Positions 6,990-44,625 of a stretch of DNA of 64,000 nucleotides are shown one piece after another. Source of the DNA: Octopus sinensis (Eukaryota). The translations under genes were made by a program, and so were the position numbers. The stretch is from NCBI RefSeq assembly GCF_006345805.1, contig NC_043018.1, forward strand, positions 14,818,001-14,882,000, in the 5' to 3' direction. Positions within the stretch are counted from its first letter, which is position 1. Every line of letters begins with the position of its first letter. The notes under the pieces are model-generated. The model searched no databases, was not told the origin of the DNA, and saw only the letters and a program-made list of their open reading frames with translations.

Positions 6990-7020
<31 letters not shown>

Positions 7021-7045
7021 GACTACTACTACTACTACTACTACA
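6600..7045. repeat. (ACT)n/(ACC)n/(GCT)n compound microsatellite
   Basis: Direct reading. Confidence 0.95.
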
Positions 7046-18005: not shown

Positions 18006-18114
<109 letters not shown>

Positions 18115-20976: not shown

Positions 20977-21654
20977 CATATATATATAAATGTGTATGTA
21001 TACACACACACACACACACATATATATACATATATATATCCATACATGAATATACAAAGTTAGATACATTTAACTCGAACTCTCAAATATCTTCGTTAAA
21101 TATAAAGTTAAATGAAATAATCAAGTAAGAATCTATTGATTATGCAGTCAACCAGAAATTAAAAATAAAAAAGATAAAGAAAGCAACAAGAAATGCAAGA
21201 TAAAAAAAATCTAATAATTTGATGAAGGCAGGAAAAAATAACATGAATGGCTTAACTCCAAAAAATAATTGTTTTTAATTACATAATTTTGTTGTTTTTA
21301 AAGAATTTGAAAGTAAATTTTTTTTGCTTTTTCAAAGTCGACACAGAAAACAGCTTTTGGATGGAAGTTGTAAAATATATCGTCATGTATGACTAGAGAG
21401 TTTGCTTAAAGCTGTACTTGACGTACGGAACCAGTCAGTATTGTAACTCAGGAATTTTCCATTCCTCATTTATCAGGAATTATCCATTCCACCTTTATTT
21501 GGAATTATGCGCTTCTCATTTAATCAGGAGAAAAAAAAAAAAATCATATTTCATTTTAGCTGCAGACATTAATGTAGATTAAAACTAAAGGTGTTACCAT
21601 AGCAATATTCAATTAATTATTGTTGTTCTTCTTCTTCTTAGTGTTACAGCTGTC

Positions 21655-21660: not shown

Positions 21661-21982
21661 AAAACTGTTTTTATGAGTTTTTTTTTTTAAAAAAAATTTG
21701 GTTTTGTGGTTGTTGGTGTTGTTGTTCTTCGCTATGGCTGTTGTAAATTCTGTGACAGCTTCTGTTGTTGTTCTTGTGTTTATAGTTGTTCATAAGCGTT
21801 GTTGTTCTCAGGCTTTTCCTTACTATGAGGCTTGTTGTTGTTGTTGTTGTTTGTTGTTCTTAAAGCTGTTATTGTTATTATCACTTCTATGTTTGATGTT
21901 GTTGTTGTTGTTTGTCTTTCATGTCAACCTGTTCCCAAGAAACTCCGCCAGGCGCATGTGACCCACCAGAGTCCAAGGTTGA

Positions 21983-22149
21983 CTATTCCTTGACTGGAAT
22001 GCTTTCGTGGGCATACGATAGTTTCCCAGTGGAAAAGTCAGAAACTGTTTGACCTTCTCCCCTTAGGACCCATTTTGTGGTCAGTAGCCCTTCAACTCCA
22101 ACAGGGCCCCTTGCATGGATACGACTTGTACTGATTCCAACCTCAGCCC
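21983..22149 (-). CDS. ALDH18A1: P5CS coding exon 14 (terminal)
   Basis: (G)[30 protein letters not shown]...[11 protein letters not shown]; tttcag|; 167 nt. Confidence 0.96.
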
Positions 22150-25100
22150 CTGAAAAAAATAACAAGGGTACATCATTTATAAAAATATAATTGTTTTAAT
22201 TTCTGATTTAATTGAAAGTAAGATGTCTTGCAAACAACTTGCACATGCAAGTGCTACCAGTCGAGAACTCCGCATACCGGGAGCCAGCAAGTGTATGGGG
22301 TCATCAGGAGAGAATGCACACCGTTTTGGGGCCAACCACTTGATGGCATCAATGCGCACTGGCCCCGCCTCACTGATATGAGGCCCCGCTTGCTAGATCA
22401 ACTGGTTATTAAATAAAGCTCACTATCAACTAATTAATTACACACAATGAAGTTATCAAATTCTTCAAAAAAACTCTGCTGCTGTGGAATATTTATGGAC
22501 AACAGATTATCACCACTTTCTTTCAATTCCAGATTCTGAGACCCCCTTCGGTCACAACACAGACCATGGGATTGCACCTAGAAAGTTACCCTCCCAGGCT
22601 CAAGCCCAGAGAAGGTTGTTTATGGAAGACCAGCAGTCGCCCATGCATACCAACCTCCCCTCTCCACGCCACCAGTGTTATCCAAGGGAAAGACAAAGGG
22701 GCCGATACAGCTTGGCACCTGTGACGTCGCAACTCATTTCTACAGCTGAGTGAACTGGAGCAACGTGAAATAAAGTGTCTTACTCAAGAACACAACACGC
22801 AGCCCAGTCCGGGATTCGAGCTCACAACCTCACGATCGTAAGCTCGATGCTCTAGCCACTGAGCCATGTGCCTTCACTATTCCAGATTAGATCTTAATTA
22901 ATTACAAAAGTGATGCTGATGTAATTTTGCTGAGTCAGTTATCAATAGCAAAATTCTGGAATGTTGTTGATGATATCATTGGTGTGTAAGTTACTCCATA
23001 TTGACACAGATAAGTGGTTAGAATAAGAGTAGACTAGTGTAACATTTAAACTAATATAACTGAATCTGTGCAAAACTGAGAGAAGATATGGTTACTTACC
23101 TAATCCAAACCTGTATCCATCAGAAAAACGTGTGCTAATGTTATGGAAAACACATGCACTGTCCACTGTTTTCAAAAATCTTTCTGCCACAGCAGCTGTG
23201 GAATAGAGAGAAATGGAACATTAGAACATGGAAACAATAGCAAAGTTCCATATAAAAAGCGCTGTCCACTCTGTAAGGTGGTTGGCGTTAGGAAGGGCAC
23301 CCAACGGTAAAAACCATGCCAAAACAGACAGTAAAGCCTGGTGTAGACTTCAATCTAGCCGGCTTCTTACAAACCATCCAACCCATGCCAGCATGGAAAA
23401 CAAACGTTAAATCATGATGATGATAATGATGACATATTAATTATTGATCTTATTAATCACAAGGTCAACTTTGTCTGACCCCCTTCTAAAACAGTAGGAG
23501 TGTGGTGGGAAGAAATCTGGTTGTTATTTCTGGAAGGTTAAGCAACCATGCAGAGTTTCCCTGACTTATTAGAAGTCGTGATGGTGTACACATGTTGATG
23601 CAGAGATACATGCCTTAGATCTGCTGCTGGTAACAAAGGGCCTCTCACTCAAAGTGAAAGGTAGACTGTATGATGCATGTGTGCACACAGCCATGCTACA
23701 CTGCTGTGAAAATTGGACTGTGACTGCTGATGACATGCATAAGCTTGCAAGAAATGAAGCTAGTATGCTCAGCTGGATGTGTAATGTCAGTGTGCATATA
23801 CAACAGAGTGGAAGCACCCTGAGAGAAAAGTTGGGAATAAGAAGCATCAGATGTGGTGTGTAAGAGAGACGACTGTACTGTTATGGTCATGTGTTGTATA
23901 TGGATGAGGACAGCTGCGTGGAAAAGTGGAGGAAACCTGTCGAAACTTGGGATGAGGTGGTGAAGCACAACCATCGAATGTTGGGCCTCATGGAAGTAAT
24001 AACAAGTAACCGAGGCCTTTGGAGATATGTTGTACTTGACAAACCAAGACCTGACAAACCAAGTGAGACTGTAGCCATGGTCTATGCCAGTGTCACATAA
24101 CCATTCAATCATTGGGCAATATACTGTGCTTGAGAAAACCTGTTGAGTGATGTGAAATTATTGTTGTAGCCGATGCCAGTACCACCTGACTAGCACCTGT
24201 GCTGGTGGCACGTAAAAAGCACCCACTATACTCTCAGAGTGGTTAGCGTTAGGAAGGGCATCTAACTGTAGAAACCTAGCCAGTGCAGACTGGAGCCTGG
24301 TGCAGCCTTCTGGCTTGCCAGTCCTTAGTCAAACTGTCCAACCAATGCCAGCATAGAAAGCGGACGTTAAACAATGATGTTGATGATGAGGATGATGCTT
24401 TAGTTCAGTAACATATCTTTCTAGGGATTTGGGGAATTTTGATTTTATTTATTTTAGTTTTTTGAAGAAACCTAACTTCAACTAACTTTTTACAGTTCAA
24501 TTTTTAAACACAATTTTCTAAGCTTGAGAAGGTAAGTAGGAGGTGCAATATTGAATTTTGCACCCCAAACAAAATTTTAGGGGATGCAAGTGCGCCCCAT
24601 ACACCCCCTGTTCCCGGGCCCTTGGACAAGGAAGTTCCTTTGTCAAGCTGCAACAAAAACAGTCGACATTTACAAACATTATTTCTGTAGCATATAAAAG
24701 TCGATGGGAATAACCATGTTTATGGGAATAACCGTGTCAAGGGGAATAACATCTCAAGGGGAATAACCGTGTGAAGGGAAATAATTCCTTACAACTTTCA
24801 TAAGCATTTCCTATTGGCTTCGTCAACTTAGCAAGTGATTAACGCTAATTAATCATCATTCTACTACTGCTTATGCGTGGTCGATCGATTTGCTAGAATT
24901 AACGACCAAATGTCCCTCAAATTGCAAATTCCAACCTATCATTAAAAATAAAATGGAAAAGAACCCAATGGTTAATGTAGTCCTAAATATATTTTGTGTG
25001 CGTGTGTGTGTGTGTGTGCGTGTGTGTATGTGTGTGTGTGTGTGTGTGTGTGCGTGTGTGTGTGTGTGAGAGAGAGAGAGAAGAGAGGAAGCTGTAGATA

Positions 25101-28100
25101 CAAAAGCAATGTTCTCACTAGACTTGAAATCTGTGGAAACAATATCGACTCTTTGAGAGAAACCAATGAATATGTTACACAATAAAGAACACATCGTCTT
25201 CACAGTTCTCCAAAGATAGGAACTCCTTAACAATCAGAATCCCAAGGTTTTCAAATGGCTGACTTAACCACACTCAATGGAATTGGTTTTACAGACACCA
25301 ACAGCAACAAGAATTACAAGTTAAAAATGCAGTTCTTATACTGGTGCCCCAGCATGGACGCGGCCTTCGGGCTAAAACATTTTTAAGGATTTAAGTTGCT
25401 TAACCTGCTAGAAATAACAACCTAATCTCTGATATATTACACTATATTTGCATATTATGTCTGACATCATTGGAACACCATTGATCAGAAGTTTATTTAA
25501 TGAGGGTCGGCTTGGTGATGGCAGTGAGGATGTTGCTTGGTCCTTCAGTGGAATCCAGGCTGTTGCAAGTAATCAGACTCGGTCGCTAGTTTGAGAACGA
25601 CTCCCACCCTGGTTCTGGGTTCAATCCCACTCCATGATACTATAACCAACAGCGTTCTTCTATCACAGTCTCCAATGGAACAAAGTCTGGAGAATGAAGA
25701 ACAGTCAGCAGAATCCACATGGAAGCTAATTAGAAAGTCAGAGAGTCAATTCCAATTCTTATTTCTTTACTACCCACAAGGGGCTAAACAGAGAGGGGAC
25801 AAACAAGGATAGACAAAGGGTTTAAGTCGATTACATTGACCCCAGGACGTAACTGGTACTTAATTTATCGACCCCGAAAGGATGAAAGGCAAAGTCGACC
25901 TCAGCGGAATTTGAACTCAGAACGTAACGGCAGACGAAATACCGCTAAGCGTCTCGCCTGGTGGTCAATTCCAATTCTATCAGTGGTCATTGGGTGGGTT
26001 TAGTGAAGACCAATTTATTTCAGCCATTCAAGCCAGGTCATCTTCTTCTTTCCAGTTTCAGGAGCCCTAAAAAGAGCCCTTCCTTTTTTTGACTAAAACA
26101 TGAAAAATTAAGAAGCTTACTTCCCAACCACATAGTCCCGGGTTCAGTTCCACTGAGTGGCACTTTGAGCAAGTTGACTTCTACTGTAGCCTCAGGCTGA
26201 GCAAAGCCTTGTGAGTGGATTTGGTAGATGGAAACTGTAAGAAGCTTGTCATATATATATATGTGTGTGTGTGTATGTCTGTGTTTGTACCCCCACCATT
26301 GCTTGACAACTAATGTTGGAGTGTTTACGTCCCTGTAACTTAGCAGTTCAGCAAAAGAGACCAATAGAATAAGTACTAGGCTTACAAAGAATAAGTCCTG
26401 GGGTCGATTTCTTCAACTAAAATCCTTTACGGTGGTGCTCTATGAGGGCCACAGTCAAATGACTGAAACATGTAAAAGAACAAAAGAAATAGATAAAAAT
26501 GGATGCCAAAGTTCATCTTACCATTCTCTGTGAGGATAGACTCTGTGTGAGCGCTACCATATTTGTGTATGTGAGAAATAGCATCATCGACATCATCTAC
26601 AATTTCAACAGCACACTCTAAACAACTGTATTCCATATTCATTCGAACTGCTGGAGAAGGGCCAAACTTCAGCAGGCTTGTTAAACGAGGACCCGCATGA
26701 ACTTTTACCTGTAAACAGAGGTTGTGAAAAGGGTTGCTAACATGATGCAAGCAAGAACACTTAGACATCCCAGACCGTCAACACTTACACTTCCAGACCG
26801 TCAATACTTACACATTCCAGACCGTCAACACTTACACTTTCCAGACCGTCAACACTTACACATTCCAGACCGTCAACACTTACACATTCCAGACCGTCAA
26901 CACTTACACATTCCAGACCGTCAACACTTACATTTTCCAAACCGTCAACACTTACACTTTCCAGACCGTCAACACTTACACATCCCAGACCGTCAACACT
27001 TACACATTCCAGACCGTCAACACTTACACATTCCAGACCGTCAACACTTACACATTCCAGACCGTCAACACTTACATTTTCCAAACCGTCAACACTTACA
27101 CTTTCCAGACCGTCAACACTTACACATTCCAGACCGTCAACACTTACACATTCCAGACCGTCAACACTTACACATTCCAGACCGTCAACACTTACATTTT
27201 CCAGACCGTCAACACTTACACTTTCCAGACCGTCAACACTTACACATCCCAGACCGTCAACACTTACACATTCCAGACCGTCAACACTTACACATTCCAG
27301 ACCGTCAATACTTACACATTCCAGACCGTCAATACTTACACATTTCAGACCGTCAACACTTACACATTCCAGAACGTCAACACTTACACACTGTCATTAG
27401 TACAATTATGTTTTTGTTTTTTTTTAATTTCTCAAAAATCTGTCAACACTTACATTTTCCATCTTAAACATTTCAAATATTTTATCAAATAAATCAGATC
27501 TGAAGAGTTGTCGGTGTATAAGGAGTGTTTCCATAGCGTTACAAGCTGCAGGATAATCACATTTAGAGTCTTTCACTGGAAAGAAACAAAGAAAGAAGCA
27601 AGTCTCAGTAATGGCAAAAGCAGGAATCTAAGGAAACGGTTGTGATGAGGACAGTAGCAACCTCTTCACTGCCAGGTAAGTGGTTTACTCATTGGTATGC
27701 ATATCCCAGTTTTACAATAGGTAGACCATATATATATATATATAAGGCAAATAAGAAAATGGAGAGGATAATCAATTGACAAACATCACCCTATAGACAT
27801 TCATTCATATCTGTTTATTAATTGATTACAATCATATGAATAAGAAATCCAAATAAACAAATGAATAAGAATAAATGAGTGAAAAAAATACTAAGCTCTT
27901 AACAGCTGTTTCTACTATGGCATGATGTGGAAAACTTGGCAGAGTGGTTGGCATTTGGAAGGGCATCCAGCTGTAAAAACCTTACCAAAACTGACTTCAC
28001 CTGTACTTGTGCCATGTAAAAAGCACCAAGTCCACTCTGCAGGGTGGTTGGTGTTAGGAAGGGCATCCAGCTGTAAAAAATCCTGCCAAAAACAGTCCCA

Positions 28101-29023
28101 GAAGTCTGGTGCAGGTTTCTGCCTGGTTGGCTCCTGTCAAACTGTCCCACCCACGCCAGCATGGAAGATGGACATTAAACAATGATGAAGATGATACATA
28201 TATGGTAAAATAGGGGTTTAAAATGCACCAAATTTATATATATGTTTTCATATAAAAGTTTTTCTATAAAACTATAAGTGCATGTTTTCACAAAGTGAGT
28301 TTCACATGGAAAAAGAGAATCACGTTTTACTGAAAAGTTTCCATGTATAAAAAAACAGTTTTACTCAATAAATTTTAATGTTTGTTTTATATTTATGTAG
28401 TATAAACTGTTTGACTCAGTTCCCCAACTTAAAGTTCTGTGGGCAGATAGGACATGCCCAACTCCTCAGATGCTAAGAGCAGAATCAGCTCCTAACATCC
28501 AATGAGGTGATGAATGGGTCCCGTGCACCCACAAAATTTCAAGTCACGTGCAACTGAATCAAATTGTTATTAAAAATACATATAGGTGTAGGAGTGGCTG
28601 TGTGGTAAGTAGCTTGCTTACCAACCACATGGTTCCGGGTTCAGTCCCACTGTGTGGCACCTTAGGCAAGTGTCTTCTGCTATAGCCTCAGGTTGACCGA
28701 AGCCTTGTGAATGGATTTGGTAGACGAAAACTGAAAGAAGCCTGTCGTATATATGTATATATATTTGTATGTGTGTGTATATGTTTGTGTGTCTATGTTT
28801 GTCCTCCAACATCGCTTGACAACCGATGCTGATGTGTTTACGTCCTCGTAACTTAGCGGTTCGGCAAAAGAGACCGATAGAATAAGTACTAGGCTTACAA
28901 AGAATAAGTCCTGGGGTCGATTTGCTCGACTAAAGGTGGTGCTCCAGCATGGCCGCAGTCAAATGACTGAAACAAGTAAAAGAGTAAAGAGTAACTCTAA
29001 CTTTCTTTCATTTGTTCCCTCAC

Positions 29024-29084
<61 letters not shown>

Positions 29085-32000
29085 CGTGCACGTGTGCATG
29101 CATGTGTGTGTACACACATGCACACACACAGACACACACAGATACATAGCTGTGCACCACACGAACCATGCTGAGCTACTCAACATGGTAAAAACTTGAT
29201 GAAATTAAAAGCCACGAAATTCATTATTTTTAATTAAATTGTTAATTAATACAAAGTGTTAGCACTTGTAAACTCCATTGGAGTTTTAAGATTTTCTCAT
29301 CAGCAAAGAAGAACATTCATTCAATCCATTCAAAGCAGCATCAAATTCAAAAACCATAATCAAAGAGGACTTTAGTCTCACCAATATCAATAACTTTATC
29401 GGGATCAGCATCTTTATCAATATACACGTGACATACGCCTTCACTGTGGCCCAGCACTGGGATTCCTTTGCTCATATCTTGAATCTTGGAGACAAGTTCA
29501 TTAGATCCTCTTGGAATAACAAGATCGATATATTCATCAAGTGTCATCAAATCTTCAATGTCTTCTCGTCGGCTCACCTGAAGAGATAGATATTTATTTC
29601 TTTACTACCCACAAGGGGCTAAACACAGAGGGGACAAACAAGGACAGACAAACGGATTAAGTCGATTATATCGACCCCAGTGCGTAACTGGTAATTAATT
29701 TATCGACCCCGAAAGGATGAAAGGCAAAGTTGACCTCGGCGGAATTTGAAATGAAGAGATAGATATTAAAAAGGATTAGATCACTCACTCCCTGATTCAA
29801 AAGAAGGATTCAATCTGTCTTCCCCTGATACATTAAAAAGGATTAGATTAGTCATCACCTGAGACATTAAGAAGGATTAGATCAGTCACTGCCTGATATA
29901 TCATCACATTTCATAATTTGGTCAACTGTTGATTCAGTGGAAATATTCGTCACTGGTCTTCTTTTCAATCATTACAGCACAAAGTAATTAACACAAAACA
30001 ATTAGTACAATGTAACACTGTGTGTGTGTGTGTGTGTGAGTGTGTATGTGTATATATAGAAGTGGAGGCACAATGGCCCAGTGGTTAGGGCACACACACA
30101 ATATTATACTAAATATATTTCTTTCGTGACCGACCAGGCTATCAGATGTTGTTACACGTCGCTGATCACAATGCGCTTTGAATCGTTTTAGCCTTCAAAT
30201 GATGCCACCCCGCTGGCTAAGCGAGCAGGCCAACAGAAGAAAGAGTGAGAGAAAGTTGTGGCAAAAGAGTACAGCAGAGATCGCCACCACCTCCTGCTGG
30301 AGCCTCATGGAGCTTTTAGGTGTTTTCGCTCAATAAACACTCACAATGCCCAGTCTGGGAATTGAAACCGTGATCCCACGACCGTGAGTCCGCTGCGCTA
30401 ACCACTGGGCCATTGCGCCTCCACATATAGGGTAACATTTAGCAATATATTAAGGTTTAAAATATATACAATAATTGAGGGCATGCGCAAAAACATTCAA
30501 GTATATGTATGCAAACACACACACACACATGCAGATAACCATATACCCCACCCCCTGAGAAATATGCAAAGAAATGCTTCAATACTTACAAGGGACACTG
30601 TTTCCTTTGGTACATAAGGCTCCAGTGCATCTTGCACCAATTCTTGTAGAAGTTTGTTACTATTTGAAGCTTCTTTTCCACCTTTTAACAACAAACCATT
30701 GGCGCTGGCAATGGCAAGGGCCGCAACCTGAAAGACAATTTCAAAACAGAATGATATAAATAAAACAGTATAACAGGGTTGTGTAAAGGCGCATGGCCTA
30801 GTGGTTAAGGTGTTGTGCTCGTAATCATAAGATTGTGGTTTCAATTCCAGTACTAGGAGGTGCAGGAGTGAATATAGGCGCAGGAGCAGCTGTGTGGTAA
30901 GTAGCTTGCTTGCCAACCACATGGTTCCGGGTTCAGTCCCACTGTGTGGCACCTTGGGCAAGTGTCTTCTACTATAGCCTCAAGCCAACCAAAGCCCTGC
31001 AAGTGGATTTAGTAGACGGAAACTAAAAGAAGCCTGTCATAAGAGTAAACAAGAGACACAGAGACAGGCAGAAACAAGGAAAATGCCCCTTGTATTTGAA
31101 TACTATACAAATATTCTTTTAAAAAAAACTTTTCTTTTAATTTTTCTAAATTTAATTATTTAATTGTTACAGTTGAAAAAGTCTCAATGACTGAAACCGG
31201 TACTGAAATGTTTTTATAAAATTATTTTAGCATTTTCTATCTTAACTTTTTTTCCATATATATATATATATAATACAAAATGAGACAAGAATGCAAAACA
31301 TCCGGACAACTAGGTGATACAAAAATGGGACAACAAAACATCCATATAGACAATACAAAGAAAACAAGGACGGGTCATTCGAAGTTTTCTATCTTCAGTC
31401 AAGAACCAGATTATCCTTGCAATTTCGGCAGATTATTCTTGAGATTGCTCCAATCTGGCCAGCCCCGTGTATGTGTGTGTATATGTTTGTATGTGTGTGT
31501 TTGTCTCCCCAATATCACTTGACAACTGATGGTGGTGTGTTTACGTCCCCGTAACTTAGCAGTTTGTCAAAAGAGACCAATAGAATAAGTACTAGGCTTC
31601 CAAAGAAAAAGTCCTGGGGGTCGATTTGCTCGACTAAAGGCGATGCTCCAGCATGGCCAGAGTCAAATGACTGAAACAAGTAAAAGAGAAAAGCGAAAAA
31701 AACACAGACACAGAAATACACACACACACACACACACACATATATGCATATACACAATGGGCTTCTTTCAGTTTCCGTCTACCAAATCCACTCACAAGGC
31801 TTTGGTCAGCCCGAGGCTATAGTAGAAGACACTTGCCCAAGGTGCCACTCAATGGAACTGAACCTAGAACCATGTGGTTGGTAAGCAAGCTACTTACCAC
31901 ACAGCCACTCCTGTGCCTATATTTAACTCTTTTAAGCAAATCCCAATGAATGGACAACATTACTTAAATAGGGGCTTTCTCCTGAAAGTAAGGAAAGGGT

Positions 32001-33706
32001 TGCTTACCTGCGGCAAAGCATCAGGGCGGGATTCAAAGATTACAAGCAGCACTCCAACAGGTACCGTGATTTGCTTCAAGTCAAGTCCATCAGCAATGTT
32101 TGAGTGTCGAATGACACGACCGACAATATCTTCAGAAGTGGCAGCGATCTGTCGAAGACCTCCAGCTAAAACATTCAGTTTCTCTTTAGTGAGTTTCAGC
32201 CGGGCAATCATGGGAGCAGACAATCCTAATGAGGAGAAGTCACAAGAATTAGAAAATAGCTGTCGTTACTAGTTTTGTTTGTTTTAAATATACATTTTTA
32301 AGAAAAAAAAAAAAAAGACATTTGATAGCAAGATAAAATAACATTTAATAACTTCATAATGATTTGCATCTCCTACCTATTAACCCTCTCGTTACCGTAT
32401 TTCTATTGAGATGCTTTGTATTTCTTTCAATTAATTTTAAATATAACAAAGAATTTAGTAAAATAACTTAACAATCCTTAAGTTGGTGTTAGGAACATAA
32501 ATTGTGACTAAGGTTTGGTAGAAGATTTTAATTCAAAACTTATGAAAACAAGACATTTGTACTTGGTGATCCCAGCTTCTAGCGACATTTTCGGCCTTAT
32601 CTGCTTAAGAACTTCTCCATTGGTGAGCCTCGCTGTCCATGGAATCTGCAAAAGTCTTCTCCAACACCAAAGCTCGAAAGCATTAATTCTTTTCTGGTCA
32701 GCTTTCTTAAAAAGCACTGGTGATGGTGCCATGTAAAAATCACACAGTACACTCTGTGAAGTGGTGGGCATTAGGAAGGACAACCAGCTGTAGAAACCAA
32801 GCCAAACCAGACAATGGGACCTGGTGTGGATCCTGAGGTTGTGAGCTCCTGTCAAACCATCCAGTCCATGCCAGTGAGGAAAACAAATGTTAAATGATGA
32901 GGATGAGGACGATGACGATGACAATAACAGAGATTTCAAAGGATGCTGCGTACCGACAGCTAACAACTGATGTGGGTAGTTTTACATAAATTTCATAGAA
33001 TACATTTATTAACATCACCGAGATATCAACAAGAAATAAAGGTTACCAACCAGTCATTTCTGCTTCGAGGACGTCTTTTCTGTTGGCCTGGAGGATTTCG
33101 TCTTTGCGGTCAATCAAGGAATTGGCAAGTCTGTAAATGATGTCAGCTCTTTCTTTTGGTGTGATCGTTTGCAACAAACGACTGCCTTCACGTGCTGTAA
33201 ACAATAATTATTGTAAAACGTTATCAATATCTACATGACTTTCTACACGAACACACACACACACACACACACAGACACACACACACATGCATACACACAT
33301 ATGTGTGTGTGAATATGGAGTTTTGAGATAATTTTTTTTATGGCTTGCATTTATGAACAATAGCACTGTTGGTCACAGATGTCCAATGGCCCATAACTGG
33401 TTCTCTGCGTTTCTATGGAAACAAACCCAAGTGATGCTTGTGCACTCAGCCTTTCACCTCTAATCTCATTGGCTGAGATAGATCATATGACAGTCTCCCT
33501 CTTTTACTCTCTCTTTCACTTGTTTCAGTCATGTGACTGTGGCCATGCTGGAGCACCGCCTTTTTTAGTCGAGCAAATCGACCCCAGGACTTATTCTTTG
33601 TAAGCCTAGTACTTATTCTATCAGTCTCTTTTGCCAAACTGCTAAGTTACGGGAACATAAACACATCAGCATTGGTTGTCAAGCATGGAAAACCATGACA
33701 ATGGCA

Positions 33707-33753
<47 letters not shown>

Positions 33754-36700
33754 CCCTGAACTTCAAGGGCTCTATCCCTATATCCTTAGTCTGAGCCTAC
33801 AAAGGAGCCTCTACATGGCCGTTTAATTTGCTAAAAATAGTAACGAAATTTCCTTCAAATCAATTACTTCAAACTTAAAAAAAGGCAAAGATACAGTTTT
33901 TAAGGCAGAGATTTGAGAAGGATCTAAAAAGGAGCAGAGGGTGAAATAGATAATGTGGTTCTGGATACCTCACAAAAGACAGGATCCCTTTGATCTAAGA
34001 GCTGCTCTATCAGAACTGACCAAGGGTTTAACAACAACAACAACAACAAAATTCTTACCTTGCATGGCTTGCAGTTCTACAGGTGTTCCAGTCACCTGAG
34101 CTGTTGTGAAAAATGTTCCAACTTGTTTGCCTTTGATAATGTTTAACAAAGCTTTCTCTTCTGTACCATTGCAGATCACTACAGACACACCATTCTGCAC
34201 AGCCCATGTAGCGGCCTTCACCTGGTAATTAAAATAGACACTTACTTTGTTTTCAATTAATTTAAAGACAATAGATACCTCTCACACACAGTGTCTTCAT
34301 TATTTTGACAGAAAAAATTTAATTCAATTTTCCACCCCCAAATGAGCTTCACCTTCATTCAGGTGTGATAATAGATTTCCATCCATAGTATAGACACCTG
34401 TTAATCTAAAGATGCAATTTTTAATGAAATAACAATGAAAATAATTTCTAAGGATCATTCACACAATGGCCAAAATTTCCAAGTAGAATATTGTCTGTTG
34501 AATTAACAGCATCCTATTTCAATAAAAGAGAGTAAATTCTTCATACCTTTGATTCCATGCCTCCAAGACCAACTCTGGATTTTCCTTCAAATACCACAGA
34601 GGTATTGTCAGTTGTCGGAGAAAATGTGTGGACGAGACGAGAACCTTCAGTACCCGGTGGACTGGTGTATAATCCATTGACATCCGACATTAATATAAGA
34701 ATATCAGAGTCCATTTCCACAGCTAAACGGGCAGCCAAACTGTCATTGTCTTTCAGACTGATAACCTAGAAAATGGTAAAGAATTTTAGGAAGAGTTCAA
34801 ATCTGTTTTTCTATGTTCAGTGAAGCTTGGAAAATCAAGAAACAATGTTTTTTCTCTTTTAAAGACAAATAAAAATTTATTTGGTTAAAAAATTCTTCTC
34901 AATCTGTGACAGATTTGGAAAAAGGTGTTGGTCTTGCTGTTTCTTTTGGGAATGAACAAAATCAACACACACACATACATACATACATATATATATATTT
35001 CCTTGTAAACTGTTTTTAACATGTTCTTATTATTATCAAAGAATGTATATATGTATTGTAATATTTTGTGACAACCAGTTCCTAACACAACAAAGCTTTT
35101 ACATGTTACTTTTGACAATCTTTTTCTAAAAAAGTGAAACCGGTCAAGTGAATAAACATCTTTTAAAATTGCATTTTCAAACCTTCTTTCATATATAAAT
35201 ATATATATATATATATATACACACACACGTACATATATGGAGACAGAGAGACAGAGAGAAATACATTATACATATATATTGAACTCAGTACAAATAATAG
35301 AGTATATTTATTTGCATAAAGTTGATGATTCCCTCTCCAACAACTCAGAACACTTCCTTTATTGATCTATTCCATTGTAGCTGACATGAAGATAATAATT
35401 AAATGTATAACTAAATGCTTAATTAACTTTAAATTAAATTTAAAATTTCTAGAAAGGAGTTTTTATTAAAATTCTACTAACATATTTTGGAAACATTTAT
35501 TTATATATTTTGATTTTACCTATCTTTTAGATTTTTATTTTTACTTACTTTTCAACATTCATATAATTATTTTCAACGCATCCATTCTTTCGTAGTTAAT
35601 TAGTTAATTAGTGATAAAATAATATTGGAACTTGTTAGTCAGGCAGACAAAGGCAAAGACAATCATGTCCTAATACAACAGTGACAGTAAGTTTTGATCT
35701 CATGGTTTTGTGGTCCACTAAATTGATAAGAGAGAGCACTCCGTCAGTTACGATGATGAGGGTCCCAGCTGATACGATCAGTGGAACAGCTTGCATGTGA
35801 AATTAATATGCAAGTGGCTGAGCAATCCACAGGCACGTGTTCCCCTAACATACTTTGATTATTGTACTTCAATTCAGGAAAAATTTAAAGGCACAGGAGT
35901 GGCTGTGTAGTAAGTAGCTTGCTTACCAACCACATGGTTCCAGGTTCAGTTCCACTGCATGACACCTTGGGCAAGTGTCTTCTACTACAGCCTCAGGCCG
36001 ACCAAAGCCTTGTCAGTGGATTTGGGAGATGGAAACTGAAAGAAACTATAATCCATTTCATTTGATTACAGATTTTAGCTTCTTTAATTAATTAAGTCAC
36101 CTTTTTTACACGATTCCTTTATAGTTTAGATATCTTTTTCTGAAAAGAAGGGACAACAGAACTTATAAAAGGTTTTTGGTCCTCTACGGATAAATTAGCA
36201 AGATTAATGAAGTTATTGTTCAGTTTGAATTCATCCAGGTTAGTAGTGAAGGGAAAACAGGGGTGAGGCAGCTGTTCAGGAAGACTGAATAATTAGGGGT
36301 ACATGTAATACGGGTTGAAGCTGTTTAGTAGATTTTTCTATAAGGGTGAGATACAAAAGGGCTGTAGGGTGGTGAAAAGATGGGTACATTGAAGGAAATT
36401 TAGATGAATGGGGGTAAATAGTCAATGAATGAAGATGTAAAGAAGCTATTGTGGATGTTGAAGAAGAGAGAGAATGAAAGAGACAACTCAAGTACAGGTT
36501 CAAATTCATTAAAACCTGACGAGTTTATATTCACCTGTCAAATGAATCACTTTTAATTATGGTTTATAATCAAAATCACAAGCTATTTCATTTGAGCTCG
36601 AGCCACAGAACTTGTTAAAAGTCTTGTACAGTACTGAGACAAAATTATAGAATTTGCTGGAATATAACAGCCAGAACTAACGCTTCTGCTAATTTTTTTC

Positions 36701-37026
36701 CAGACCACAAAGTTCCATTGGGTTCAGCAAACAACTACAACTTCTAAAGCAGTAAAAAGATGAGAAATAGATTTCCCCATGGATAGAATATTGGATCAAT
36801 AAAGGTAGCTTCCCCATTATTTTAATTCAGTACCCTACAAACCAAAAAACTCTGGTACTGCTGTCTACTTACAGATCACTACTCCAGGTAGGTGGAAGCA
36901 CCATAGTTAATTAACTGGTGGTTTTTATCTATCAAGACCACCAGCCCTGACAATGTCCTCTCCATTATATTGAAACTACATACCTCAGAACTAAACCCTG
37001 TCCTCACTCGAATCACTCCATCTCCA

Positions 37027-37060
<34 letters not shown>

Positions 37061-37355
37061 ACTCTCTCTCTCAAGGGATGCTATGGTAAACATGCCACAG
37101 GGTATCCCATTTGCAAGAAAGGCAACCTGGTAACCTCTTTCAAAGTATAGCTGAAACCCCTAACTCAATCAACCATCTAACGCCATCTTATTGCACTGAT
37201 GGAGACAACCATTAACAACAGAAATAGCAGCCAGATCTCCCTTAACTCACACTCTACAGTCTTAAATAAATGTATGTTTGCCTGATTAGAGATGTTCAAC
37301 AGCAGTGAAGATTTTCAACATTAATGTTTGATTACCAGAAGATGAAGAATGGAGG

Positions 37356-37414
<59 letters not shown>

Positions 37415-40400
37415 ATTTCAAATAAGCAGAATATGGAAAAAAAAAACTTTTGATCAACAAACAAATTGACCAACATCGGTTAATTAATTTTTTTAATACA
37501 AAACATAACATAACATTTCTTACAGCCGTTTCGGCTGCCAATGTCAGTTGGTGCTTTCAAAGAAGGCTCAATATATACGAATCATACCATTTTTCAGTAT
37601 TCAACTTCAAGCTTCACACTGAAAAATGCTATGATTCTAATATATTGAGCTTTCTGGCCTCATCTCAAGACCCTGATCTTTCCTCTTCCCTTCTTTTATT
37701 TTATGTATGTGTATTCACTCTGATGAAGCTCCATGTACTAGATTGAATATGCTATAAAGATGACAAATATTATTTTCGGAATTTCCTTTGAAAGCACCGA
37801 CTGACATTGGCAGCCGAAACGGCCGTAAGAAATGTTATGTTATGCTTTGCATTGAAAAATAATTAACCGATGTTGGTCAATTTGTTTAAATTTGAATTCC
37901 TGATAAACTTTTGTTTATTCTGTTATTACCTGTATCCTATGAGCATAGTGTGCTTGCAAGCCGATGCCCAGGGTTAACATAGGCAAATGATACAGGTAGT
38001 AAGAACAGATATTCTTATCCCTTAGATGGTTATTCCAGCTGCTAACTCTGCTTACCTACACACTCACACACACACACACATATGATATATATCTATTTGA
38101 CAACCTCACTGCTGTTGGTGCCACATAAAAAGCACCCAGAACACTCTGTAAAGTGGTTGGCATTAGGAAGGAAGTCCAGCTGTAGAAACCATGCCAAAGC
38201 AGACATAGAACCTGGTGAAGCCCTCTGGCTCGTCTGTTCTTGTCAAACTGTCCAAACCATGTCCAGCATGGAAAAAGGGACATTAAATGACGACGACGAT
38301 GATGATGATGATGATGATAATGATGATGGAGCTGATCTCAATGCTATCCAACTTTCATGTACAGGAAACAATTGGTTCAGAAAACTATGCAGTAGTTTAG
38401 TAGTAGCAGTATTAGTCAAACTAGTAGTAATAATAGGATATTAAAGACAGGACCCTATCCCCAACACCCCTTTTTTTTTAAATATTTTTATAAAAAATTT
38501 TCACGTATCATTTTATTAAAATAATTCCCTTCTCATTTTGTTGTTATCTGAAACAAAGGTTGTTTTTTTTTTCTTTGATATCTCAAGGGGTAACTAAAAC
38601 CATAACCAGGACTTAATTCACCAAATCTTTGTTTCTAGAACAGCAAATAGAAAAGAAAGGAGAAGGGTTCGATTTCAAAGCAATTTTGCAATTTTCTTTT
38701 TTGTAGTTTTCTGGATTTCCAAGACCAAAGATATTCCATAAAACCATGTATCTCTTCCCTAAATGGTAAGAACAATGGTATATTATATCGTTTAATATTT
38801 TTTATTGTAAAAACTGGTTTATTTTAGCAAAGGATTTATTAAATCCCCACCATTGCATAACTGGTACTTTGTTTGCTAATCCTCAGAATTATGGATTTAT
38901 TATCCAAGAACTGAAGTCTTTCTATACAAATCCACTCATTCACTGCATTTCCACAGAGTTACAAAAATCATTAATATCAATTATGCTGGATTATTAAGCA
39001 TGTAATATAAGGCTTGGGAAAGTCCCCTGTGAAGGACTAGCCTCCAATCTATGGAAATATTTATTTCTCACTTATTCAATGTGACAGTGTCTAGACTTAA
39101 CCTCACATATAGACATAATATCAATGATGGTAGATTATTAGCATCGAGCGAGGTCGTTGCCAGTGCCACTGGACTGGCACCTGTGTAGGTGGCACATAAA
39201 AAGCACCATTTGAGCATGGCCACTGCCAGTGCTGCCTGACTGGCCCTCATGCTGGTGGCACGTAAAAGCACCCAATACACTCTCGGAGTGGTTGGCGTTA
39301 GGAAAGGCATCCAGGTGTAGAAACTCTATCAGATCAGATTGGAGTCTGGCGCAGCCATCTGGTTCGCCAGACCTCAGTCAAACCGTCCAGCCCATGCTAG
39401 CATGGAAAGCGGACGTTAAACGATGATGATGATGATTAATATAAGGTTTTGAGAAAGTTTTCTGTGAAGGACTAGCTTCCTATCCATGAAAATATTTATT
39501 TCTCTTTTACTAAATGTGACAGTATCCAGACTTAATTTTAGACCCTACAGATTGTTCATGTGAACAGCAAAATGGACAGACCTCATTCGATATGCTTTTA
39601 AGGTGCAGGTTCCGGCTGTGAACTATTTAATTTCATTTGTAGGGTTAACACCTTTAAAACACAGCATGAAAGACTCAACTTTCAAATTTATTACATTCTA
39701 TTAAAGTAAATAGACAGTGGTTTTGTCTCTAAAAACAATTGCTCCAACAGAAACCATTCCACATAAATTAAAAAGATGGAAAGTAATATAAGTACCAGAA
39801 AAATGGCTTTTCAATAACCCTTTCTACTACAGGCTGAAGGCCTGAAATTTTAGGGGAGGGGACAAGTCAATTCCATCAACCCCCAGCATTTGACTGGTAC
39901 ATGAATGGCAAAGTCAACCTCAGCAGAATTTGAAATCAGAATCTAAAGAGGGATGAAATGCTGATATGCATTCTACCTGGAATGGTAACAATTCTGCCAA
40001 CTCATCTCCTTATCATTTTTTTAATAATCCTTCCTCTTAAAGACACAAGGCCTAAAAATTTGAAGGAGAGGGGAGTCAATTATATTGACCTCAATGCATA
40101 ACCGGTACTTATTTCATCAACCCCCGAAAGAATGAAAGGCAAAGTCAACCTTGGCGGAATTTGAACCCATAACCTAAGGACAGATGAAATGCCACTAAGC
40201 TTTGCACCTAGTGTGCCAACGATTCTGCCAGCTCACCACCTTATGGTCTTTTAATAATAAAAGCCCATTTATTCTGATAATCTAATGCCAAATTTTGATC
40301 CTGATCTTTTTAATTTCAAAATCTTTATTCACCAGGGCTAGAGTCATCCTATCAGTTGGTCCTTAAACTTGTGACCAACAACTGGAACCAAAATACTATC

Positions 40401-41781
40401 TACAGACATAAGATTACTTACAAACTAATATCTCAGACATTGTGAAATTCTTCATAAAACCCAAATATTTTTGGGGAATAGTTTTCATTGCAATTTTCTT
40501 GCCATATATAAAAAGAAATTTAATTATCCTCATATTTAAGTTCTGTTTTCATCATAAATACCAGTTTTTTACTAAAATTGCGACCCTTTCTTATTATTAT
40601 TTGCCATTTCTATAAACACAATTCCTCACCTGCTCTGCTGCATCCATATATACCTAAAAAATGGGACGTGCGGATTAGTGACAGAATTGAAACTGTAAAA
40701 CAAAATACATGAGAAAACATGCCAAAGTGAAGATTAAGGAATGTGTGACTGTAGTTTCTAGGATATCATTTGGAATCGGTTAGTTTAGAGACAGAAACTG
40801 TAAACTGGAATGACAAAAATTCTTCTGGAAAATATTTTGAAGTTTCATTTGATTTCAATAGAAAGAAAGAATATTGGTCAATATAAATAATTATCAATTA
40901 CATAATTACAGAATCAGAATCGAAATCGATCAATGGAAATTGCAGCTGAGTTACCAGTGCCGGTGGCATGTAAGAGAACCATCCGAATGTGGCCATTGCC
41001 AGCACCGCCTCGACTGGCCTCGTGCCGGTGGCACATAAAAAGCACCATCCGTTCATGGCCATTGCCAGCCTCGCCTGGCACGTAAAAAGCACCCACTACA
41101 CTCATGGAGTGGTTGGTGTTAGGAAGAGATTCCAGCCATAGAAACATTGCCAGATCAAACTGGGCCTGGTGCAGCCTTCTGGCTTCCCAGACCCCAGTTG
41201 AACCGTCCAACCCATGCTAGCATGGAAAGCGGATGCTAAACGATGATGATGATGATGATAATTGATCGTTAATTAGTCTTCTTCTTGTGCTGCTGCTGCT
41301 GCTACTGTTGTGTAATTTGAAACCGTGAAAGTCTTGCAACACTTGTGATGCTTGTCTTTGTTTTTAATGCAAAAAAGCGTGATGGCTGTAGTAGAACAGT
41401 GTGTAGGCTGATGTAATGCAGTGTACTATAATGTAATAGTATATGTGTGAGTGTACGGATATGCATGTGGTTTGATGTAGAATATATTTGTCAACATGTT
41501 ATTTCTCGTAGACAAAAGAGCTCTCATGTTTGGCTTGTTACTATGGAAAAAGACACCTATAAATCTGTGGCTTATGATTGGCTAAAACTACTCCAAATTT
41601 GTAAACTTTAAAAGCTATTAACTCATTATTTATTGATTTATTGATTTTATAGCAAGTTGATGCAGGTAGTTTATCCCGTCTCCCTCTGACCTTTAGTTCA
41701 TGCAAATGAAAAAATTGTATTATTTATGGGATGACCCACTACATATATATATATATATACATACACACACATACACACATG

Positions 41782-41815
<34 letters not shown>

Positions 41816-41843
41816 CACACACACTTTATGATTGTGTGAATGA

Positions 41844-41889
<46 letters not shown>

Positions 41890-44561
41890 CCAACATGACT
41901 CAGCTGTATGGTTGTATCTAGTCGAAAAGTAGTATGAGACCATGCGTGTGTGTGTGTGTGTGTGTGTGTACTGTATTGATTTAATATTGAGAAAAAGCAT
42001 TAGTGAGACACGAGTCTCATCCTAAAACTCATCACAGAAAAGGTTGCGACTTAGAAATCCCAGTTACACTCCAGAGGTTACAATTACAACCACAATGTCC
42101 TTGTTACTTGTAATAAATCACTGTTACGTAACAAATTTCGGTCACATCTTAAAAACAATAATTGGATGTGAACACAGTTAACTTAAAAGTATAGTGACTT
42201 ATTATGAAACACAGTTACTGCCCAGTCACCATAGTAACAGAAACTACATTAATTAATAATCAGGTTCCTCACATTAAAACAACAAAACAATAAGAAAAAT
42301 AACCAGGTAACAAAACATTGTAAAACTTACCCCTGAGAGGTCCTTGTCTTGCTCTGGTGGTGGGGCAACAGCATCGTTTGCATTTAATATTGGGATGATG
42401 TTTAATCGAATCAACTCTGATAGGGTGCTATGCAAATTCTTACGGCTTTCCTCATTGCTGAAGTCAGGTTTGGTCACTAACACCTAGAAAAAAATTGAAA
42501 TTTAGATCGAATCATTGTCTTATAAATTCCATTGTATTGCTTGGACATTATGGAAGGTTTCTTCTTTCAGTGATGGTGATTTAAGAGAAGATACACTGAT
42601 GCAGTTCCTGGCTGGATTTGAAACCTGCACTGCAACCCAATAAAATATCAATTTTAGATTTCATGTTGTTGCAGAGCTACAGTCAGTTCAGCTCAAGTAA
42701 TATTTCCACTATGGAGGCATTAGATCCAGATCCATGTTATTATAGTCCAGTCTTATCTGAAAGTAACTCCTGTTTAATATTATTAAGGTGGAGGCTCATG
42801 GCCTAGTGGTTAGAGCAGCAGACTCACAGTCGAGGGATCGCGAGTTCGAATCTCAGACCAGGCGATGTGTGTGTTTATGAGCGAAACACCTAAGCTCCAC
42901 ACGGCTCCAACAAAAGGTAATGGTGAACTTCTGCTGACTCTTTCGCCACAACTCTTTCCTCCTGCACGTAGGAAGCACCTAACACACTCTGTTAAGTGGT
43001 TGGCGTTAGGAAGGGCATCCAGCCATAGAAACCAAGATAAAACAGACAGCTGGAATCTAGTCAGCTCCATGACAAACTATCCAACCCATGCCAGCATGGA
43101 AAGCAGACATTAAACGATGATGATGATGATTTTCTGATAAGCAAAAGTCAGTTGTTTCAGCTTTCAATGTGAGACAACCAGCAAAATAAAATATAAAATG
43201 CCTTGCTTAGAAGAAAATAGGTAAGGGTTAGAGACAGGAAAAGCATGCAGCCATTGGAAATCTTTGGCAACAAGTTTCATGTAATGTATCCTGACATGAA
43301 AAACAGAAATAAAAATCAATAAAAAAAAAACATAAAATGGACTTCATTACATTTCTTTTTGCCAAGTTTTAAAAAAAAGGTATTGTGAACCCAAGGTAAG
43401 GATATGCATCACTTGCTCAAGATGCTGTGAAGTGGAATTGAACCAGGAATGCCATGGTTGAGAAATAAACTTCTTAACCACAAAGCCATGCCTTTTAGGT
43501 TTACACGTCCAGGAATTTTGTTCTTTGAACTAAATTTTCTCAATTGATCAGCATTCTTCATCATTGAGAATGGAACCTGTTACTGTTGTCCAAAGATTGA
43601 TAGCAAACATGTAATTCCTCACATCATTAAAATGATGCAAGGAAATCGGTAACGATGATTGATAAACTCATAACCATTAAACACACACACACACACACAA
43701 TTATGGAAGAAGATTTTTTTTCTCTCTTCCCTTTTTTGACTGAATATTATTAAATATTTTCCTTTTCTCCAAAACTGTGATAAAACACATTATCATTATT
43801 ATTATTAAAAGCTTATCATAAAACTAACCTCTTGCATTGTGAACTTTAAACTGAAAGTCTGTGTCACTGTTAATAACAATAAGGATTTTGGTCTGATAAA
43901 AGAAGAATTTTAAATATAAAAATATTATCTGTTTTAGCTCTTTCAGTTTATAGTTATCCCTGAATTAATTATATTAACACTGACCCAATTATATTTATAT
44001 GATGACCTATTTTTCTTGGTAGATGGCATCTGAGTAACTTATTCTCAAAATAATTCTATTTTTCAAAGACAACCAGTGTATGGTAGTGATTCTTCTATCA
44101 CTACTGAAGCAAGTGGAGTGAAGCCTGTGTTTAGCTAATGAGAACATAATAAGATTGGAACATGTCTGTAGTTACTGAAATAATTACAATAGTATCATTC
44201 ACTGGTTAATACCACTTTCGTTTTTCTTCACTTCATAATTATTCTTAGTTAAATTTTTAAAACAGTAATTTAATTATTAATTTAAAACTTTAACGAATCC
44301 ATGCTGTGCCCTCACTCTCCTAATCTTCTAAACAAGTTTCCAGTGTGGTTTTTCTGTGCATATCAACTGAGGTTACATCACCACCTTGCACGTGCTAAAC
44401 GGGAAGCCTCTACCAGGTTGATAAACCTATTAGAAATAGCAGCCAAATCATTCATGAATCATAATCTACTACCTTAAAAAACAAGTGTACATTGGGTAGT
44501 GTACTCCTAGGTACACTACGTTTCAGATCATAGATCTGCTTGGTCAAGGTAGACTTAGGAC

Positions 44562-44625
<64 letters not shown>

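What the first reader, a model, noticed from the sequence alone, without database searches (positions are those of the whole stretch)
26756..27453. P5CS intron 11 is a tandem array of its own 5' splice site
Seen: the real donor reads TGGAAAAT|GTAAGTGTTGAC. Starting 62 nt into the intron are 26 units of 24 bp that each contain GTAAGT. Three units (GT at 27195, 27075, 26931) match the real junction over 20 nt. The variants recur every 5-6 units (144 and 120 bp), and the array stops about 47 nt before the acceptor. The true donor has a non-consensus exonic AAT, so the copies look no weaker. Nearly all copies are in frame (66+24n nt), but using any of them adds a TAA at intron nt 28-30. Inference: the array could act as a U1-binding/decoy array or AS-NMD switch, and its VNTR length could tune P5CS level.
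Basis: partly seen in the sequence, partly recalled or inferred. Interest (0 to 1): 0.8.

Follow-up and report, generated by a model that had tools for sequence, protein, structure and literature searches.

The report
Intron minisatellite copying its own splice donor
An intron of a proline-synthesis gene (P5CS) holds 26 tandem 24-bp copies of the gene's own exon-intron junction, each with a perfect splice-donor motif; this kind of repeat is already known from several human genes, where the extra donors are mostly ignored, so it is a neat but not new curiosity.

Summary
On the minus strand a P5CS/ALDH18A1-like gene has a 745-nt phase-0 intron (donor G 27453, acceptor G 26709). It contains a 24-bp x 26.5 tandem array (26756-27390, 94% matches). 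All 26 units carry GTAAGT. Three units match the authentic junction 20/20 (8 exon + 12 intron nt). Units form a 5-6-unit higher-order repeat, 25 of 26 pseudo-donors are in frame, and TAA lies at intron nt 28-30.

It is a junction-derived intronic minisatellite. That kind is documented for human F7 IVS7, IFI 6-16, CBS IVS13, LMNB2 and PDGF, where only the most upstream donor, or the first few, are used. It differs in a unique A-rich stretch (51 nt between the junction's 12-nt match and TRF's array start) that separates the true junction from the array.

Sequence tests give no support for a designed decoy or NMD switch. The invariance of GTAAGT is not significant (P = 0.09). The stop and the frame are expected by chance. 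There is no RNA structure. No close relative was available for comparison.

Most likely it is a near-neutral VNTR whose pseudo-donors are spliced out with the intron. Any leakage would be an NMD substrate. A modest length-dependent effect on expression remains possible but untested.

The parts
21977..47455 (-). P5CS (delta-1-pyrroline-5-carboxylate synthase / ALDH18A1-like) gene, 14 coding segments detected, stop near 21980
   Evidence: The boundaries carry GT/AG. Database hits to the exon 11+12 peptide are named delta-1-pyrroline-5-carboxylate synthetase / gamma-glutamyl phosphate reductase.
27454..27575 (-). Donor exon (11th coding segment found), 122 nt, ends ...ATG GAA AAT (M-E-N) at a codon boundary
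   Evidence: Many animal homologues end an exon at the same residue (...EN|V...EQ|V), so the intron position and the exon-end codons are ancestral.
27446..27461 (-). Authentic 5' splice junction TGGAAAAT|GTAAGTGT (GT at 27453-27452)
   Evidence: Phase 0. Approximate consensus value 0.80.
27391..27441 (-). Unique A-rich spacer between the 12-nt junction match and TRF's array start. It carries the in-frame TAA (27426-27424) and an ATTAAA hexamer (27428-27423). TGACAG direct repeats overlap its two ends (27445-27440 and 27396-27391).
   Evidence: Read. blastn of the spacer finds only low-complexity A-rich matches elsewhere in the window.
26756..27390 (-). 24-bp minisatellite with consensus GTAAGTGTTGACGGTCTGGAATGT, 26.5 copies. 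The unit types read ABCCDEFG-DDDFH-DDDEFH-DDDFDIE, a higher-order repeat of 5-6 units. Edge units are divergent, and the last partial unit has decayed to CTAAGT.
   Evidence: TRF, pattern search 26 hits vs 0 expected, unit table.
27184..27203 (-). Unit junction 20/20 identical to the authentic exon-intron junction (TGGAAAAT|GTAAGTGTTGAC)
27064..27083 (-). Second 20/20 copy of the junction
26920..26939 (-). Third 20/20 copy of the junction
26709..26755 (-). Unique 3' end of the intron: pyrimidine-rich tract and acceptor TTTACAG. The last GTAAGT (26788) would leave an 80-nt intron.
26522..26708 (-). Acceptor exon (12th coding segment), starts GTAAAAGTT (V-K-V)
   Evidence: Homologues start an exon at the same residue.

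Best explanation
This is an intronic minisatellite, probably a VNTR, that was born from the exon-intron junction itself.

Origin (inferred):
- A 20-nt piece made of the last 8 exon nt and the first 12 intron nt became part of a 24-bp unit.
- The unit was amplified by slippage or unequal exchange. The latest rounds moved blocks of 5-6 units.
- A unique A-rich stretch (51 nt up to TRF's array start) now separates the true junction from the array. It may be a later insertion into the first monomer, since TGACAG direct repeats overlap its two ends.
- Every unit therefore carries a GTAAGT pseudo-donor as a by-product of its origin.

How it most likely works (inferred):
- The spliceosome uses the authentic, most upstream donor, through exon definition or 5'-to-3' polarity, as shown experimentally for F7 IVS7.
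- The whole array is removed with the intron.
- Rare use of a pseudo-donor would carry the in-frame TAA into the mRNA and produce a substrate for nonsense-mediated decay.
- The array is thus a near-neutral passenger with at most a mild, length-dependent effect on productive P5CS mRNA.

Shown here: the anatomy, the derivation from the junction, and the higher-order repeat. Inferred: splice-site choice, NMD, polymorphism and neutrality.
For: -
- The exon-end codons E-N and the intron position are shared with many animals. The exon half of the unit was therefore copied from the exon, not the other way round.
- The variants AAAT -> AAGT -> ATGT are one-step neighbours and sit at fixed places in a 5-6-unit higher-order repeat. 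Unique variants lie at both edges of the array. This is the usual signature of unequal-exchange homogenisation.
- The unit is absent from the rest of the window, so it originated locally.
- All 14 coding segments are intact and conserved, so productive splicing must occur.
- There is no sign of selection on the motif (P = 0.09), no RNA structure (z = +0.89) and no inverted repeats.
- Precedent is given in PMC1557585. Junction-spanning minisatellites in F7, IFI 6-16, CBS, LMNB2 and PDGF reiterate the donor. In F7 the pseudo-sites are functional but never compete with the most upstream site, even when their consensus value is raised to 91.
Against: - There are no RNA data, so splice-site use is inferred by analogy from mammals to what is probably an invertebrate.
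[quoted passage not shown] That is the opposite prediction.
- Here the pseudo-sites are GTAAGT, stronger on the intron side than the weak F7 site, and they begin 66 nt downstream instead of being contiguous with the junction.
- No population or sister-species data were available, so polymorphism and neutrality are untested.
Confidence: 0.62

Rival explanations
1. This is the first reader's idea of a regulatory U1 sink or unproductive-splicing switch. The 26 pseudo-donors bind U1 snRNP and divert a regulated share of transcripts to PTC-containing isoforms. Alternatively they modulate use of the weak-exon-side authentic donor, or suppress the nearby ATTAAA. Copy number would then tune the P5CS level.
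For: - All units keep GTAAGT, with 7-8 of 11 positions matching a perfect U1 complement, like the authentic site.
- Use of any pseudo-donor includes the TAA at nt 28-30, upstream of further junctions.
- In vitro, intron-proximal strong sites win (PMC3413131).
- The first pseudo-sites are used in IFI 6-16 and CBS.
- CBS VNTR length is associated with enzyme activity, according to the title of Lievers 2001.
Against: - The invariance of the motif is not significant (P = 0.09), and the last unit has already decayed to CTAAGT.
- The stop and the frame are expected by chance.
- The high identity between units and the higher-order repeat indicate a young, homogenising array, not a conserved element.
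- The one relative with enough upstream sequence (L003, 77% aa identity in exon 12) shows no array in the last 1.2 kb of the orthologous intron, though it is distant.
- F7 experiments show such pseudo-sites do not compete.
Confidence: 0.2
2. The pseudo-donors win under the intron-proximal rule. Most transcripts of this copy would then be unproductive, making the gene copy a poorly expressed or decaying paralogue.
For: PMC3413131: with two strong sites, the intron-proximal one is used. The last GTAAGT leaves a feasible 80-nt intron.
Against: All coding segments are intact, collinear and conserved, with canonical splice sites and no frameshift. Natural arrays of this kind in human genes do not behave this way.
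Confidence: 0.06
3. The array acts at the DNA level. For example, it could be 26 tandem TGACG (bZIP half-site) motifs serving as an intronic enhancer, or a recombination hotspot, with the splice motif incidental.
For: Every unit contains TGACGG. A CARE-like TGATGCAA lies next to the array at 26743-26750.
Against: The 8-mer occurs at chance frequency in the window, 3 found against 4.1 expected. The TGAC is simply part of the copied intron start (GTAAGTGTTGAC). No binding or conservation data exist.
Confidence: 0.05
4. Assembly artefact: the array, or its copy number, is mis-assembled.
For: Tandem arrays are prone to collapse or expansion during assembly. I could not inspect reads.
Against: The array is only 635 bp. 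It has an ordered variant and higher-order structure and unique, decayed edges that join cleanly to unique flanks. That is hard to produce by mis-assembly. Its existence is safe, and only the exact copy number is uncertain.
Confidence: 0.04

Closest known systems
Human F7 intron 7 minisatellite (37-bp x 5-9; PMC1557585)
   Same: It is an intronic tandem array derived from the exon-intron junction, so the authentic donor is followed by identical pseudo-donors. The pseudo-sites are potentially functional, and the array is a VNTR.
   Different: The first F7 monomer itself spans the boundary (4 exon + 33 intron nt), and the site is weak (UGG/gugggu). Here the array sits 63 nt inside the intron behind a unique spacer. 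It has 26 copies of 24 bp (8 exon + 12 intron nt copied) and a consensus GTAAGT. Use and polymorphism are untested here.
Human interferon-inducible 6-16 (IFI6) intron 2 minisatellite (Turri et al. 1995, as summarised in PMC1557585)
   Same: The number of reiterated donors is about the same (25 pseudo-sites), and the units are short.
   Different: [quoted passage not shown] Here any use would bring in a stop codon, and the first pseudo-site is 66 nt away.
Human CBS 31-bp VNTR c.1444_1467+7(16_21) at the exon 13/intron 13 border (PMC2630376; Lievers 2001; Yang 2000)
   Same: It is a metabolic-enzyme gene with a junction-spanning VNTR and 16-21 reiterated donors. Repeat length is reported to be associated with enzyme activity.
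   Different: The CBS unit is mostly exonic (24 exon + 7 intron nt) and contiguous with the exon. Two pseudo-sites are used.
LMNB2 (100-bp x 10-15) and PDGF intron 4 (81-bp x 16-18) junction-reiterating repeats (cited in PMC1557585)
   Same: [quoted passage not shown] Only the authentic donor is used.
   Different: The units are much longer, and these are mammalian genes.
Pseudo-5' splice site / U1 decoy elements (Drosophila P-element exon pseudo-sites, retroviral negative regulator of splicing; from memory)
   Same: They are U1-complementary sequences that are not used for productive splicing.
   Different: Those are single or double conserved elements with demonstrated factor binding. Here there is a young homogenised array with no evidence of binding or conservation.

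Membership tests
Junction-derived intronic minisatellites that reiterate the splice donor (F7 IVS7 / IFI 6-16 / CBS / LMNB2 / PDGF type) | Tandem array of minisatellite-size units in the intron immediately downstream of the donor exon | tested here: met
   TRF: 24 bp x 26.5 copies at 26756-27390, inside the 745-nt intron.
Junction-derived intronic minisatellites that reiterate the splice donor (F7 IVS7 / IFI 6-16 / CBS / LMNB2 / PDGF type) | Units contain a copy of the exon end plus intron start, including the GT donor | tested here: met
   8 exon + 12 intron nt are copied: 20/20 in 3 units, 19/20 in 4, and 18/20 in most others.
Junction-derived intronic minisatellites that reiterate the splice donor (F7 IVS7 / IFI 6-16 / CBS / LMNB2 / PDGF type) | First monomer itself spans the exon-intron boundary (array contiguous with the exon) | tested here: not met
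   A unique A-rich stretch (27441-27391) separates the junction's 12-nt match from TRF's array start. TGACAG direct repeats overlap its ends, which hints at a secondary insertion, but that is inference only.
Junction-derived intronic minisatellites that reiterate the splice donor (F7 IVS7 / IFI 6-16 / CBS / LMNB2 / PDGF type) | Copy-number polymorphism (VNTR) | not testable with these tools
   No second individual or close relative was found. The higher-order repeat and the 94-100% unit identity suggest ongoing turnover.
Junction-derived intronic minisatellites that reiterate the splice donor (F7 IVS7 / IFI 6-16 / CBS / LMNB2 / PDGF type) | Only the authentic donor, or the first few donors, are used | not testable with these tools
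   No transcript data. The intact conserved coding exons imply that productive splicing occurs.
U1 snRNP decoy / pseudo-5' splice site regulatory element | Complementarity to the 5' end of U1 comparable to real donors | tested here: met
   7-8 of 11 positions match a perfect complement. Duplex energies are -7.3 to -8.3 kcal/mol, the same as the authentic site.
U1 snRNP decoy / pseudo-5' splice site regulatory element | Evolutionary conservation or purifying selection on the motif | tested here: inconclusive
   None of the 7 variable unit positions falls in GTAAGT, P = 0.09. The terminal unit has decayed to CTAAGT. No close relatives were available.
U1 snRNP decoy / pseudo-5' splice site regulatory element | Demonstrated U1 binding and an effect on splicing or polyadenylation | not testable with these tools
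   Needs CLIP, minigenes or antisense blocking.
AS-NMD (regulated unproductive splicing) element | The alternative site introduces a premature stop upstream of a downstream exon junction | tested here: met
   TAA at intron nt 28-30, in frame, with two further coding exon junctions downstream. A stop this early is expected about 78% of the time by chance.
AS-NMD (regulated unproductive splicing) element | The alternative junctions are actually used and respond to NMD inhibition or to the gene's own product | not testable with these tools
   No RNA data.

The most novel reading that the evidence does not exclude
The array is a functional, copy-number-tunable 'donor rheostat'. Its 26 consensus pseudo-donors would capture U1 and shunt a condition-dependent share of P5CS pre-mRNA into TAA-containing NMD substrates, or shield the cryptic ATTAAA in the spacer. 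Array length would then set proline/ornithine biosynthetic capacity and could be under selection, for example for osmotic stress tolerance. It would also be a natural test of two competing rules for choosing among identical 5' splice sites, upstream-most versus intron-proximal, outside mammals.
Probability: 0.12. Interest if true: 0.6.

Novelty: new variant of a known kind. Interest (0 to 1): 0.3.

Why it matters
If the ordinary reading holds, this adds a non-mammalian example, in a new gene, to a small set of natural repeated-donor introns. It has an unusually strong motif (GTAAGT x 26) and an array displaced from the true junction. That makes it a handy natural substrate for asking how a spliceosome picks one of 27 near-equal donors: the F7 'oriented scanning' result against the in-vitro intron-proximal rule. 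If array length affected P5CS output, it would be a simple heritable dial on proline/ornithine synthesis. Neither effect is shown here.

Tried and rejected
1. Comparative evidence led nowhere.
- The protein search with the exon 11+12 peptide found only fragments at 61% identity or less across the junction, and 77% or less for single exons.
- Contigs for the two closest exon-12 hits were read. L003 has more than 1.2 kb of upstream intron without any array. L001 has only 66 nt upstream.
- An exact-pattern scan of metagenome contigs for a unit dimer found 0 hits.
- The related-loci scan reached at most 61% identity.
- Neither window ORF, on either strand over the array or exon 12, is on record in the assembly collection. 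Neither other individuals nor sister species could therefore be examined.

2. Structure was rejected. The intron RNA fold has z = +0.89, and there are no inverted repeats.

3. Known RNA families and tRNAs: none in the window.

4. The spacer as a transposable-element fragment: only A-rich low-complexity matches.

5. The CARE/ATF4-like 8-mer beside the array occurs at chance frequency.

6. The bacterial promoter/terminator scan is irrelevant for this eukaryotic locus.

8. The paper of Turri et al. 1995 (PMC306954) is not held.

9. Selection on GTAAGT is not significant.

Full report
**Observation.**
- Reading the minus strand of 26500-27700 shows an exon ending ...AAG ATG GAA AAT, followed by GTAAGTGTTGAC.
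- After a unique A-rich stretch comes a long run of GTAAGTGTTGACGGTCTGGAATGT units, and then the acceptor TTTACAG|GTAAAAG.
- Tandem Repeats Finder reports a period-24 array at 26756-27390: 26.5 copies, 94% matches, no indels, score 1116. It is by far the largest minisatellite in the window.
- A 19-nt core is found 26 times with at most 1 mismatch, against 0 in 100 shuffles, and nowhere else in the 64 kb.
- A script places the donor G at 27453 and the acceptor G at 26709, giving a 745-nt intron.
- It places the 26 extra GTAAGT at offsets 66+24n. The last is at 665, after a 23-nt unit.
- Three units (GT at 27195, 27075, 26931) reproduce the real junction TGGAAAAT|GTAAGTGTTGAC 20/20. blastn of the junction confirms 3 x 100%, 4 x 95% and about 13 x 90% over the same 20 nt.
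- The intron is phase 0, and TAA occupies intron nt 28-30 (27426-27424).

**Gene context.**
- The two flanking exons translate to a gamma-glutamyl-phosphate-reductase segment. Database hits are named delta-1-pyrroline-5-carboxylate synthetase.
All are intact and have GT/AG borders.
- The donor exon is the 11th of these, so 'intron 11' is reasonable but depends on unknown 5' exons.
- Many homologous gene fragments from other animals, vertebrate-like ones included, end or start an ORF match exactly at this residue (...EN|V...EQ|VK). The intron position and the exon-final codons are therefore ancient.
- It follows that the exon-derived 8 nt inside the repeat unit were copied from the exon, not the reverse.

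**Anatomy of the array.**
- The unit types read A B C C D E F G | D D D F H | D D D E F H | D D D F D I E, plus a decayed partial unit (CTAAGTGTT).
- The interior is a higher-order repeat of 5-6 units (120/144 bp). Within it the three one-step variants ...GGAAAAT (junction-like), ...GGAAAGT and ...GGAATGT keep fixed places. Private variants sit at both edges.
- This is the classic picture of a minisatellite homogenised by unequal exchange and decaying at its borders.
- Seven of the 24 unit positions vary and none is in GTAAGT. That happens by chance with P = 0.09, so there is no significant evidence that the donor motif is protected.
- The unique stretch between the junction and the array is A-rich, has no copy elsewhere in the window, contains ATTAAA, and has the direct repeat TGACAG overlapping both ends (27445-27440 and 27396-27391).
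- This is compatible with a small insertion into what was once a first monomer contiguous with the exon. That is inference only.

**Strength and accessibility of the sites.**
- Authentic site: AAT|GTAAGTGT.
- Three units are identical to it. Five have AGT| and the rest TGT| on the 'exon' side. Three units have GTAAGTAT, which extends U1 pairing to +8.
- Matches to a perfect U1 complement are 7-8 of 11 for all. Crude duplex energies are -7.3 to -8.3 kcal/mol for all 27 sites.
Other donors of this gene range from 0.58 to 1.0.
- The whole-intron RNA fold is no more stable than shuffles (z = +0.89), and there are no inverted repeats. Nothing suggests masking by structure.

- 'In frame' follows from 24 = 8 x 3 plus a 1/3 chance for the 66-nt offset.
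- An in-frame stop within the first 22 codons of an AT-rich intron is expected about 78% of the time (my arithmetic from a roughly 62% A+T composition).
- These cues do not indicate design.

**Comparison with what is known.**
- The literature search led to Borensztajn et al. 2006 (PMC1557585). It describes exactly this kind of object: minisatellites whose first monomer spans an exon-intron boundary, so that the donor is reiterated in the intron.
- Its examples are F7 IVS7 (37 bp x 5-9), IFI 6-16 intron 2 (25 pseudo-sites), CBS IVS13 (15-20 repeats), LMNB2 (100 bp x 10-15) and PDGF intron 4 (81 bp x 16-18).
- In F7, LMNB2 and PDGF only the authentic site is used. In 6-16 and CBS the first two pseudo-sites are used as well.
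[quoted passage not shown] Moving the first functional site further away promotes exon skipping.
- The CBS VNTR is written c.1444_1467+7(16_21) (PMC2630376). By the title of Lievers 2001, it is associated with reduced enzyme activity.
[quoted passage not shown] The outcome here cannot be taken for granted.

**Verdict on mechanism.**
- The best-supported reading (about 0.6) is a junction-derived, near-neutral intronic VNTR.
- The authentic upstream donor is used, the array leaves with the intron, and any leakage carries TAA and is an NMD substrate.
- The intactness and conservation of all coding segments require that productive splicing takes place.
- Minor rivals are that the pseudo-donors dominate and the copy is poorly expressed, a DNA-level role for the 26 TGACG motifs (the adjacent CARE-like 8-mer is at chance frequency), and mis-assembled copy number.

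**Membership and novelty.**
- The object meets two defining features of the F7-type family: an intronic minisatellite right after the donor exon, and units that copy the exon end plus the intron start with the GT.
- It fails the strict one, a first monomer spanning the boundary, because of the unique stretch between junction and array.
- Polymorphism and site usage could not be tested.
- I therefore file it as a new variant of a known kind: it works like the F7/IFI6/CBS arrays, in a new gene and probably a new phylum, with a displaced array and a consensus GTAAGT.

**Limits.**
- No close relative or second individual could be found in any accessible collection. Conservation, polymorphism and assembly accuracy are therefore open.
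- The organism is unknown. An abundant ~184-bp SINE-like repeat (tRNA-derived is my guess only) and the extreme microsatellite load remind me of octopus genomes. That is memory, not a test.

Noticed in passing
window 1201-1318, 1598-1787, 2629-2959, 8321-8576, 25754-25943, 29595-29750, 40074-40190, 48041-48416, 56366-56544, 58040-58152 and others: A ~184-bp SINE-like repeat occurs at least 14 times at 77-95% identity, twice as tandem dimers (2628-2959, 48044-48416). It contains ...GGCGGAATTTGAACTCAGAAC..., which looks like a tRNA T-arm to me (my reading; ARAGORN and Rfam found no tRNA). From memory it resembles the abundant SINE of octopus genomes; this is unverified.
   Followed up: partly
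window 29595-29750 (next to exon 10, which starts at 29577 on the minus strand): One SINE copy ends 18 nt upstream of the acceptor of the 10th coding exon. Its tail (...ttagccccttgtgggtagtaaagaaataaatatctatctcttcag|) lies immediately upstream of that 3' splice site.
   Followed up: no
window-wide, e.g. 61391-61811 (ACAT)106, 50235-50565 (AG)168, 6797-7044 (ACT)83, 17778-18028 (AT)127: Microsatellite density is extremely high: 56 TRF rows with score of at least 80 in 64 kb. Tandem-repeat turnover seems to be a general property of this genome.
   Followed up: no
window 26702-26716 (minus strand): The acceptor of the array intron is directly followed by a donor-like GTAAAAGT (TTTACAG|GTAAAAGT), formally like a recursive splice site. 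The GTAAAAGT encodes the conserved V-K-V start of the exon, so this is probably coincidence.
   Followed up: no
window 27423-27428 (minus strand): An ATTAAA poly(A)-signal variant overlaps the in-frame TAA 26 nt into the intron and is followed by the GU-rich array. It could be a cryptic intronic polyadenylation site kept silent by nearby U1 sites. This is speculative.
   Followed up: no
window 26724-27467 (+ strand): A 247-aa ORF, (PDRQHLHI)n, runs antisense through the array, because the 24-bp unit has no stop in that frame. It is a repeat artefact and is not on record as a called gene. On the sense strand the unit is also open in the exon's frame (VSVDGLEC)n.
   Followed up: yes
window 32508-32966 (minus strand): An ORF fragment with ...[28 protein letters not shown]... 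looks, from memory, like the C-terminal part of a LINE reverse-transcriptase ORF. It lies between the 7th and 8th coding segments (33058 and 32223), so presumably in that intron.
   Followed up: no
window 26743-26750 (+ strand): TGATGCAA, the core of the C/EBP-ATF (amino-acid response) element, sits just 3' of the array. It occurs 3 times in the window against 4.1 expected, so it is not significant.
   Followed up: yes
window 24706-24784, 29765-29888, 21448-21529, 49425-49561: These are other small minisatellites (18, 34, 25 and 62-bp units, 2-4 copies), three of them inside or next to the P5CS gene. I did not compare any of them with splice junctions.
   Followed up: no
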